From NCBI GenBank assembly GCA_053919585.1, contig CM132795.1: a stretch of 64,000 bases of DNA. One strand, written 5' to 3'. The notes beneath the pieces were generated by a model that had not been told where the DNA came from, made no database searches, and was given only the letters and a program-made list of their open reading frames with translations. Both the position numbers and the translations under genes were made by a program. Numbering within the stretch: position 1 is the first letter of the stretch; every line of letters begins with the position of its first letter. This DNA is from Euprymna scolopes. Taxonomy: Eukaryota. Below are positions 30,006 through 30,470 of the stretch, in pieces.

Positions 30006-30470
30006 ATACATTTCTACTTGGCCTTTTGGCCAAGATCAAAGTTAAATTTTACATTGAACGCTGGGGTTATTAGTTAGATTAGGATCCACAGAGTGATTGA
30101 GGTATTTTGGTAAATGTTGCCAGTCAAGAGTAAGACTTCAAAGTCTCATCTGTTACATAGTCAAAAAGACCCTGTACCCTCCCCCTCCCAATTTCTTGTA
30201 GGGCCTTGTGCCTAATTTTGTTGAATTGAATTTTTTGTACGTTTTTTTTTTTATGTTCAATTTTTTCTTTCTCAATAAAATATATAAACAAGATCAAAGT
30301 GTAGTATCTGTTTTTCAGATGCTGCACTTCCATTTCTTGTTCTCCTTCGGTGGAGGATCAATCCTTCACGACTGAGACAATTTTTTATTTTTGTACCTTT
30401 TCTCCACGTTAAAAAACGACCCTGGTGTCTAACTCTGTCCCGTGGGGAGGCATAGTAAATAGGTACTCTA
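30006..30470 (+). pseudogene. Divergent U2 snRNA-like locus interrupted by an insertion
   Basis: CTTGGCCTTTTGGCCAAGATCAAAGT (30017-30042) resumes at 30289 as CAAGATCAAAGTGTAGTATCTGTT, covering U2 stem I and the branch-point recognition region. Downstream are a CTCC-TTCGGT-GGAG hairpin, an Sm-like ATTTTTG and CTCCACG...CGACCCTGGT, resembling the U2 3' half. The 3' boundary is uncertain. Confidence 0.8.
30043..30288 (+). mobile_element. ~246-bp retro-type insertion with a 12-bp target-site duplication
   Basis: Flanked by CAAGATCAAAGT at 30031-30042 and 30289-30300. Ends in a T-rich tract, AATAAA and an A-rich tail. Confidence 0.7.

What the first reader, a model, noticed from the sequence alone, without database searches (positions are those of the whole stretch)
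30006..30470. U2 snRNA-like locus split next to its branch-point recognition sequence by an insertion with a 12-bp TSD
Seen: U2 stem I (CTTGGCC-TTTT-GGCCAAG) and AGATCAAAGT, then ~246 unrelated bp ending in AATAAA and an A-rich tail, then CAAGATCAAAGT again and GTAGTATCTGTT. Removing the insert and one TSD restores a contiguous U2 5' domain. Known: U2-targeting non-LTR retrotransposons exist (Keno in the Tx1 clade, and Utopia); as I recall, their site lies slightly further 3', just before TCTGTTCTT. Inference: this is a 5'-truncated retroelement, possibly from a U2-specific family with a different nick site.
Basis: partly seen in the sequence, partly recalled or inferred. Interest (0 to 1): 0.8.

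Follow-up and report, generated by a model that had tools for sequence, protein, structure and literature searches.

The report
U2-homing LINE fragment in U2-headed retroposon
A 246-base tail fragment of a jumping gene that homes to one spot in U2 spliceosomal RNA sequence has landed in a short U2-headed repeat; the family uses a different spot from the known U2-homing elements and has over a thousand copies because that repeat offers thousands of landing pads.

Summary
Window 30010-30042 is the first 33 nt of a U2-type sequence. 30043-30288 is a foreign 246 bp ending in AATAAA plus an A/T-rich tail. CAAGATCAAAGT flanks it at 30031-30042 and 30289-30300.

The insert is the 3' end of a 7.6-kb non-LTR retrotransposon with ORF1 and an ORF2 (APE endonuclease, RT, zinc finger). 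Its best Swiss-Prot match is Xenopus Tx1.

- The genome holds 1,261 exact copies of its 3'-terminal 24-mer. 94% are followed exactly by CAAGATCAAAGT.
- Full-length copies are preceded by U2 nt 1-46/47, giving a 25-26-bp duplication. Truncated copies keep part of it, 12 bp here.
- Head-to-tail arrays are common.
- A copy with 97% identical ORF2 sits at the same site in the genuine 764-bp U2 gene array.

The 3' junction (nt 21/22) lies 17-18 nt upstream of the Keno/Utopia site. I confirmed that site in natural Keno copies from a fish and an amphioxus. The ORF2 tree puts this lineage outside the Keno clade.

One correction: the host is not a U2 gene. It is one of about 7,500 copies of a TSD-flanked retroposon in which only the first ~48 nt derive from U2. 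Earlier notes of this scan, on other DNA of this genome, already described that retroposon and U2-homing LINEs.

The parts
30010..30042 (+). 5' part of the host element: the U2-derived head (U2 nt 1-33, with extended stem I CTTGGCC-TTTT-GGCCAAG) of a short U2-headed retroposon
   Evidence: Sequence. Partial U2 model match. The same head starts about 7,500 dispersed copies.
30031..30042 (+). Upstream copy of the target-site duplication CAAGATCAAAGT (U2 nt 22-33). The last 3 nt (AGT) are microhomology with the LINE.
30043..30288 (+). 5'-truncated copy (last 246 bp of the 3' UTR, with AATAAA and an A/T-rich end) of a 7.6-kb U2-homing Tx1-like LINE. It is 97-98% identical to the young subfamily.
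   Evidence: This 5' junction is unique in the genome.
30289..30300 (+). Downstream copy of the target-site duplication CAAGATCAAAGT
30289..30472 (+). Rest of the host retroposon: U2 nt 22 to ~48 (branch-point recognition GTAGTA), then a non-U2 body and tail ending ...AAATAGGTAC(TCTATA)
   Evidence: 93-99% identical to tails of other copies. The body is not U2-like. Only a short possible flanking duplication (TATAC) is seen at this locus.

Best explanation
The locus is one copy of an abundant short retroposon whose first ~48 nt come from U2 snRNA. A site-specific non-LTR retrotransposon later inserted into that head.

Inferred mechanism, by analogy with other APE-type LINEs: the LINE's endonuclease nicks the bottom strand between U2 nt 21 and 22, at GG(C/T)|(T/C)AAGATC. 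Reverse transcription of the LINE RNA is primed from that nick. The top strand is cut about 25 nt downstream, after TCTGTTC(T).

Shown from the copies: full-length copies carry a 25-26-bp duplication of U2 nt 22-46/47. 5'-truncated copies are joined with part of it lost.

At this locus reverse transcription stopped after 246 nt, and the end was joined at a 3-nt microhomology, leaving a 12-bp duplication. The event happened in place.

The family belongs to the L1/Tx1 group, nearest Tx1. It homes to U2 sequence like Keno, but at a site 17-18 nt further 5', and it lies outside the Keno clade. It reached over 1,200 copies because the U2-headed retroposon spread its target across all chromosomes.
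For: - Family and truncation: insert plus downstream sequence recurs on many chromosomes, with variable 5' ends and one fixed 3' junction.
- 3' junction: 1,261 exact hits of the LINE's 3' 24-mer, and 1,181 with CAAGATCAAAGT attached; controls 0.
- 5' ends: 337 full-length 5' ends, at least 214 directly preceded by U2 nt 23-47.
- U2 head next to truncated copies: 19 of 21 visible 5' junctions have a U2 head ending between nt 14 and 52.
- Coding capacity: ORF2 has Exo_endo_phos, RVT_1 and zf-RVT domains. Its AF2 model best matches Xenopus Tx1 (E 1.5e-66, 24% identity), against 18-19% for L1.
- Genuine U2 genes: in the 764-bp U2 array a copy with 97% identical ORF2 has the same junctions, and there its flanks are true U2.
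- Tandem arrays: head-to-tail arrays with exactly nt 22-46/47 between copies, in this genome and in two other assemblies.
- Duplication comes from the target: nt 22 co-varies between the upstream and downstream copies (C/C usual, T/T in L025, A/A in L020, T in the true U2 array).
- Independent insertions: host tails are 93-97% alike whichever LINE subfamily (97% or ~80%) is inserted, and a tail A/T variant is mixed across subfamilies.
- Event in place: the window's own 5' junction is unique in the genome.
- Empty targets: 7,468 uninterrupted target copies, flanked by 8-16-bp duplications.
Against: - L011 has a 16-bp duplication directly flanking a truncated LINE plus retroposon tail with no U2 head, and L017 may be similar. 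So some LINE-plus-tail units were moved as one piece.
- The nick positions are inferred from junctions, not measured.
- An element-borne copy of U2 nt 22-39 at the LINE's 3' end would give the same structures with the nick at the Keno site.
- Clade assignment rests on a structure/identity ranking and on a tree without labelled Tx1 or L1 references. The AU test group was defined after the tree was seen.
Confidence: 0.87

Rival explanations
1. The LINE is not site-specific. The sequence after its A/T-rich end (U2 nt 22 to ~48 plus the retroposon body) is the LINE's own 3' tail, shared with its SINE partner. LINE and SINE both integrate at TAC-type sites, and U2 heads are added to truncated copies by template switching.
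For: L011 shows a 16-bp duplication around truncated LINE plus tail with no head, and L017 is compatible. Tx1 elements and SINEU with added U1/U2 heads are described in crocodilians (PMC4494074). Every dispersed LINE copy read carries the same tail.
Against: 19 of 21 readable 5' junctions have a head that never extends beyond about nt 52. A copy with 97% identical ORF2 sits in genuine U2 genes, flanked by true U2 3' sequence and not by the retroposon tail. Tail variants are mixed across LINE subfamilies. Nt 22 co-varies between head and tail.
Confidence: 0.06
2. The family uses the classical Keno/Utopia nick (3' flank starting TCTGTTCTT), and the LINE RNA itself ends with a copy of U2 nt 22-39. 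The true duplication would then be only 7-8 bp, and the different site would be apparent only.
For: The resulting structures are identical for full-length copies and tandem arrays. Co-transcribed target sequence at the ends of site-specific LINEs is known (inference from the R2 and R1 literature).
Against: Nt 22 matches the local target class in each case: T in the true U2 array, C in retroposon copies, T/T in L025 and A/A in L020. Most truncated copies would then need target deletions of 5-25 nt. Natural Keno copies end in poly(A) or AGTA directly before TCTGTTCTT with no such mimic.
Confidence: 0.07
3. A chance direct repeat or a local rearrangement of a decayed U2 pseudogene, with no mobile element involved.
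For: None beyond the AT-richness of the region.
Against: Over 1,100 identical junctions genome-wide with zero control hits. A parent element with RT ORFs exists.
Confidence: 0.005

Closest known systems
Keno (Tx1-clade, APE-type non-LTR retrotransposons specific for U2 snRNA genes; fish, frogs, lancelet, hydra)
   Same: APE endonuclease plus RT plus C-terminal zinc finger. Strict homing to the conserved 5' region of U2. Precise 3' junction with variable 5' junction, target duplication, insertion into tandem U2 arrays. Natural examples read here: Coilia grayii (14-bp duplication TCTGTTCTTATCAG) and Branchiostoma lanceolatum.
   Different: The 3' flank starts at U2 nt 22 instead of nt 39/40, which is 17-18 nt further 5'. 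The duplication is 25-26 bp. ORF2 is only 28-35% identical to the Keno references and falls in another clade. There are over 1,200 copies, mostly in a U2-headed retroposon rather than in U2 genes.
Utopia (RLE-type U2-targeting non-LTR retrotransposons; PMC4640811)
   Same: U2 gene homing, precise 3' boundary with varied 5' boundary, occasional tandem insertion. Reptile families make 20-bp duplications.
   Different: Utopia encodes a restriction-like endonuclease after the RT and a single ORF. This element has an N-terminal APE endonuclease and two ORFs, and a different site.
SINEU and Tx1-Mar of crocodilians (PMC4494074)
   Same: Short retroposons with U2-derived heads coexist with Tx1-type LINEs, some of which carry U2 heads. 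No pol III promoter is evident.
   Different: In crocodilians SINE and LINE share a Mariner target. Here the LINE targets the SINE's own U2 head, while the retroposon copies read here lie at TAC-type sites. The host is a mollusc-like genome, not a reptile.
R1/R2-type rDNA-specific LINEs
   Same: Site-specific insertion in a multicopy RNA gene, fixed 3' junction, variable and 5'-truncated 5' junctions, tandem reinsertion.
   Different: Different target and, for R2, a different endonuclease class.

Membership tests
Non-LTR retrotransposon, L1/Tx1 group | ORF2 with N-terminal APE-type endonuclease, RT, and C-terminal zinc-binding domain; 5' truncation; no LTRs | tested here: met
   Pfam hits PF03372, PF00078 and PF13966. 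Best PDB relative is human L1 ORF2p, E 5e-69. Variable 5' ends with a fixed 3' end. 337 full-length against about 1,260 3' ends.
Tx1 clade | RT phylogeny groups with Tx1 rather than L1 | tested here: inconclusive
   Best Swiss-Prot structure match is Xenopus Tx1 149 kDa protein (24% identity, E 1.5e-66), ahead of L1 ORF2 (18-19%). Natural Keno copies are among the ORF2's sequence relatives. No tree with labelled Tx1 and L1 references could be made.
Tx1 clade | Target-sequence preference, common in the clade | tested here: met
   U2 for this family. Relatives at 46-61% identity end next to other fixed sequences.
Keno | Specific insertion into U2 snRNA sequence | tested here: met
Keno | 3' flank begins at U2 nt 39 (TCTGTTCTT) | tested here: not met
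   Here the 3' flank begins (C/T)AAGATCAAAG at nt 22. Keno references begin TCTGTTCTT (PMC4640811).
Keno | Falls in the Keno lineage in RT/ORF2 phylogeny | tested here: not met
   Separate starred clades. The AU test rejects one clade of all U2-targeting rows (delta lnL 1026, p 3e-46). The group was named after seeing the tree.
Utopia | Restriction-like (PD..D/ExK) endonuclease C-terminal to the RT | tested here: not met
   APE-type endonuclease at the N-terminus, with no RLE hit.
U2 snRNA gene (RF00004), for the host element | Reaches Rfam's gathering score; full U2 architecture | tested here: not met
   An uninterrupted copy scores 41.2 bits against a gathering score of 46, matched essentially over the first ~48 nt. 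The body is not U2-like (z 1.4). The genuine U2 of this genome is a different sequence in a 764-bp array.
SINEU-like U2-headed retroposon, for the host element | Short element with an snRNA-derived head, dispersed, flanked by target-site duplications | tested here: met
   7,468 copies of the junction-spanning 43-mer. Duplications of 8-16 bp in L002, L003, L010, L012, L013, L019, L020, L024, L030.
SINEU-like U2-headed retroposon, for the host element | Mobilised by a Tx1-type LINE sharing its target preference | not tested
   The copies read here lie at TAC-type sites, not in U2. Its mobilising partner was not identified.

The most novel reading that the evidence does not exclude
The U2-homing LINEs and the U2-headed retroposon form a self-reinforcing pair. 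The retroposon's head (nt 1-47, with the GGTCAAG variant also carried by the second LINE lineage in the true U2 array) would derive from the U2 leader that such LINEs acquire by co-transcription. Each new retroposon copy then creates a new landing pad for the LINE. This would explain how a LINE tied to a low-copy gene target reached over 1,200 copies, and where snRNA heads of SINEU-type elements come from. It would also mean three distinct U2 nick sites among APE-type LINEs (nt -1/+1, 21/22, 38/39), evolved independently.
Probability: 0.3. Interest if true: 0.75.

Novelty: new variant of a known kind. Interest (0 to 1): 0.55.

Why it matters
U2-targeting LINEs are known (Keno, Utopia), and both were reported to use one and the same site. 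The authors who described them argued that homing to a low-copy gene is a poor survival strategy (PMC4640811).

Here an APE-type lineage outside the Keno clade homes to U2 at another position. A sister lineage in the true U2 array appears to use a third position. The family escaped the copy-number limit because a U2-headed retroposon spread its recognition sequence to about 7,500 places.

That gives a natural test set for three questions: how APE endonucleases evolve new sequence specificity on one conserved target, how a target-specific LINE can expand, and how snRNA-headed SINEs relate to such LINEs.

The practical consequence is for annotation. The thousands of U2-like hits in this genome are retroposons, and the split ones are LINE landing sites, not variant snRNA genes.

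Tried and rejected
- A search of the genome with the 246-bp insert alone found nothing, not even itself. The tool skips very common words. The 701-bp query worked.
- Searching the genome with Rfam U2 failed twice. A conserved U2 pattern replaced it.
Pattern counts were used instead.
- The look-up of sequencing runs was unreachable twice, so there are no expression or polymorphism data.
- The AU test on the 62-row mixture-model tree did not finish. It was redone on 35 rows with LG+G4.
- Protein searches gave no family names.
- P0002's contig could not be read, though its gene map shows tandem LINEs.
- Relatives at 46-61% identity (L053-L055) have no U2 nearby.
- I first read the host element as a whole-U2 derivative. 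I dropped that after the body failed a shuffle test.
- A clear duplication flanking the host element in the window itself was not found; only TATAC.

Full report
**What is in the window**

One search shows ATTTCTACTTGGCCTTTTGGCCAAGATCAAAGT at 30010-30042. It is followed by 246 unrelated bases (30043-30288) that end ...CTCAATAAAATATATAAA. Then comes CAAGATCAAAGT again (30289-30300), running on into GTAGTATCTGTT.

Rfam's U2 model sees both halves only weakly (23 and 20 bits), and nothing reaches threshold in the whole-window scan.

**The insert belongs to a large family with a fixed 3' junction**

A genome search with window 29900-30600 gave 2,477 candidates. The insert plus the downstream sequence recurs on many chromosomes at 78-97% identity. 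The copies have variable starts and one common end. The host sequence without the insert also recurs, at 98-99% identity.

Reading the flanks shows three things:
- The 3' junction is always ...ATATAAA|CAAGATCAAAGTGTAG.
- The inserts are truncated at different points.
- Most are preceded by a U2 head.

Pattern counts make this quantitative. The LINE's 3' 24-mer occurs 1,261 times exactly. With CAAGATCAAAGT appended it occurs 1,181 times (94%). Reversed-pattern controls give 0 (one search agrees).

**The parent element**

Ten-kb stretches upstream of six copies define a 7.6-kb element. One copy has an open ORF1 of 868 aa, and another an open ORF2 of 1,145 aa.

ORF2 carries Exo_endo_phos, RVT_1 and zf-RVT domains. 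Its closest solved relative is human L1 ORF2p. An AlphaFold model (pLDDT 85.7) matches the Xenopus Tx1 149-kDa protein best (E 1.5e-66, 24% identity), ahead of L1 ORF2 proteins at 18-19%.

About 337 copies keep the 5' end. So roughly three quarters are 5'-truncated, as is usual for LINEs.

**The target site**

Full-length copies are preceded by ...CAAGATCAAAGTGTAGTATCTGTTC(T) and followed by CAAGATCAAAGTG.... This is a 25-26-bp duplication of U2 nt 22-46/47. At least 214 of the 337 5' ends have this exact context.

In 5'-truncated copies the head ends anywhere from nt 14 to about 52. That fits a fixed first nick and a ragged second joining. Nineteen of 21 readable 5' junctions have a head.

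Head-to-tail arrays with exactly nt 22-46/47 between copies are frequent:
- L033 and L034 show it directly.
- Many pairs spaced 7.6 kb apart appear.
- Arrays reach five copies.
- The same arrangement occurs in two other assemblies (L056, L057).

**Genuine U2 genes are hit too**

A conserved U2 pattern finds about 1,187 canonical U2 copies, mostly in a 764-bp tandem array on contig 9. Gaps in that array hold LINEs.

One of them (L049) has ORF2 97% identical in nucleotides to the dispersed family, with dN/dS 0.21. It has the same junctions...TCTGTTCT|LINE...AAATAAA|TAAGATCAAAG. Its flanks are true U2, including the promoter side and the U2 3' half. This excludes the idea that the downstream sequence is merely the LINE's own tail.

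**The host element is not a U2 gene**

An uninterrupted copy scores 41 bits against Rfam's gathering score of 46, matched essentially over the first ~48 nt. The remaining ~150 nt are no more like the genuine U2 than shuffled sequence (z 1.4).

A 43-mer spanning the insertion site occurs 7,468 times with at most 2 mismatches. Copies are flanked by 8-16-bp duplications that begin with TAC. Examples are TACTCTAGCGATCCAG (L003), TACCATAAGTCA (L020) and TACATATGTGCATACAT (L030). So it is a U2-headed short retroposon.

Earlier notes of this scan on other DNA of this genome (s1-244860, s1-247338) say the same. They prompted the shuffle test.

**Independent insertion versus co-mobilisation**

Several results point to separate insertions into pre-existing copies:
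- Host tails are 93-97% identical to the window's tail whether the inserted LINE belongs to the 97% subfamily or the ~80% subfamily.
- An A/T variant in the tail is mixed across both subfamilies.
- Nt 22 co-varies between the upstream and downstream copies: C/C usually, T/T in L025, A/A in L020, and T in the true array. This supports a real target duplication starting at nt 22.
- The window's own 5' junction 35-mer is unique in the genome, so this event happened in place.

The exceptions are L011, and perhaps L017. In L011 a 16-bp duplication flanks truncated LINE plus tail without a head. Some co-mobilisation therefore occurs.

**Comparison with the known U2-homing elements**

According to PMC4640811, Utopia and Keno share a 3' flank starting at U2 nt 39.

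Two of the ORF2's distant relatives turned out to be natural Keno copies:
- In Coilia grayii, U2-U5 arrays hold a LINE with 5' junction ...TCTGTTCTTATCAG| and 3' junction poly(A)|TCTGTTCTTATCAG.
- In Branchiostoma lanceolatum the 3' junction is ...AGTA|TCTGTTCTT.

The present family's junction is 17-18 nt further 5'.

In an ORF2 tree the window family, L049 and a second U2-array lineage (L050) form one clade. That clade is nested among relatives that include an Argonauta hians protein and elements with non-U2 targets. The Keno references sit in another clade. An AU test rejects a single clade of all U2-targeting rows (p 3e-46). The caveat is that the group was defined after the tree was seen.

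**Mechanism: what is shown and what is inferred**

Shown:
- The fixed 3' junction.
- The graded 5' junctions.
- The duplication.
- Reinsertion in tandem.
- The coding capacity.
- Occupancy of both genuine U2 genes and retroposon heads.

Inferred:
- A bottom-strand nick at nt 21/22.
- Target-primed reverse transcription.
- A top-strand cut near nt 46-52.
- Microhomology joining at this locus (AGT).
- Possible co-transcription from the U2 promoter in the array.

**Verdict**

The corrections are that the host is a U2-headed retroposon and that the full duplication is 25-26 bp. This is a new variant of a known kind.

A 5.9-Gb genome with at least 46 large contigs, whose nearest named protein hit is from a cephalopod, suggests a decapodiform cephalopod. 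That is an inference.

Noticed in passing
L050-L052 (contig 9 U2 array, reverse-complemented copies): A second LINE lineage (ORF1 766 aa and ORF2 1,151 aa, both open) sits in the genuine U2 array. Its 3' end abuts U2 nt 1 (...CTAAATACA|ATCGCTTCTC). It is preceded by a U2 nt 1-46 head carrying GGTCAAG, the variant of the dispersed retroposon, whereas the U2 gene after it has GGCTAAG. The head therefore looks element-borne and the site looks like a third U2 position.
   Followed up: partly
L032:2972-5575 versus the LINE in L049: Two LINE copies with 97% identical ORF2 (dN/dS 0.21) have ORF1 proteins only 57% identical and 3' UTRs 86% identical. This is a mosaic or module-swapped structure.
   Followed up: partly
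L027:1484-1679 (uninterrupted host retroposon): The retroposon RNA folds far better than shuffles (-66.7 kcal/mol, z -5.5). Stem I is extended to 7 bp. The branch-point recognition sequence GUAGUA is buried in a 14-bp hairpin with retroposon-specific sequence, so it could not act as a U2. This bears on the other first-reader note on this stretch (s1-245056).
   Followed up: partly
window 32191-32308 (+), 44778-44894 (+), 50064-50180 (-): Three 5S rRNA matches (42.7, 49.9 and 75 bits) are only 75-80% alike, and the similarity stops at the 5S part. They are dispersed 5S pseudogenes or 5S-headed elements rather than an array.
   Followed up: partly
Contig 2 at 31190385, 31197318 and 31204251; contig 1 at 92401243 and 92408235 (one search list): Uninterrupted U2-headed retroposon junctions recur at about 6.9-kb spacing. 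This suggests arrays of some other element that carries or abuts a whole retroposon copy.
   Followed up: no
L053:7330-7380 and L055:6630-6680: LINEs 58-60% identical in ORF2, from other assemblies, both end next to TGGAG(T/G)G(G/A)GTGCA...GTGC(C/T)CAC. In L053 this lies just upstream of a gypsy-type gag-pol. They look like relatives with an LTR-retrotransposon target, as reported for some crocodilian Tx1 families.
   Followed up: partly
L059, L060 (Coilia grayii, GCA_042479465.1): An 897-bp U2-U5 tandem array holds a Keno-type LINE with a 14-bp duplication of U2 nt 39-52. It makes a clean natural reference for the classical site.
   Followed up: yes
L019: This 5' junction is complex: head nt 10-28, then retroposon nt ~47-72, then nt 19-33 again, then the LINE. 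It suggests template switching between retroposon RNAs during 5' end formation.
   Followed up: no
window 11089-12464, 17370-17627, 39927-40085: Five runs of N total 1,241 bases. They are left as they are.
   Followed up: no
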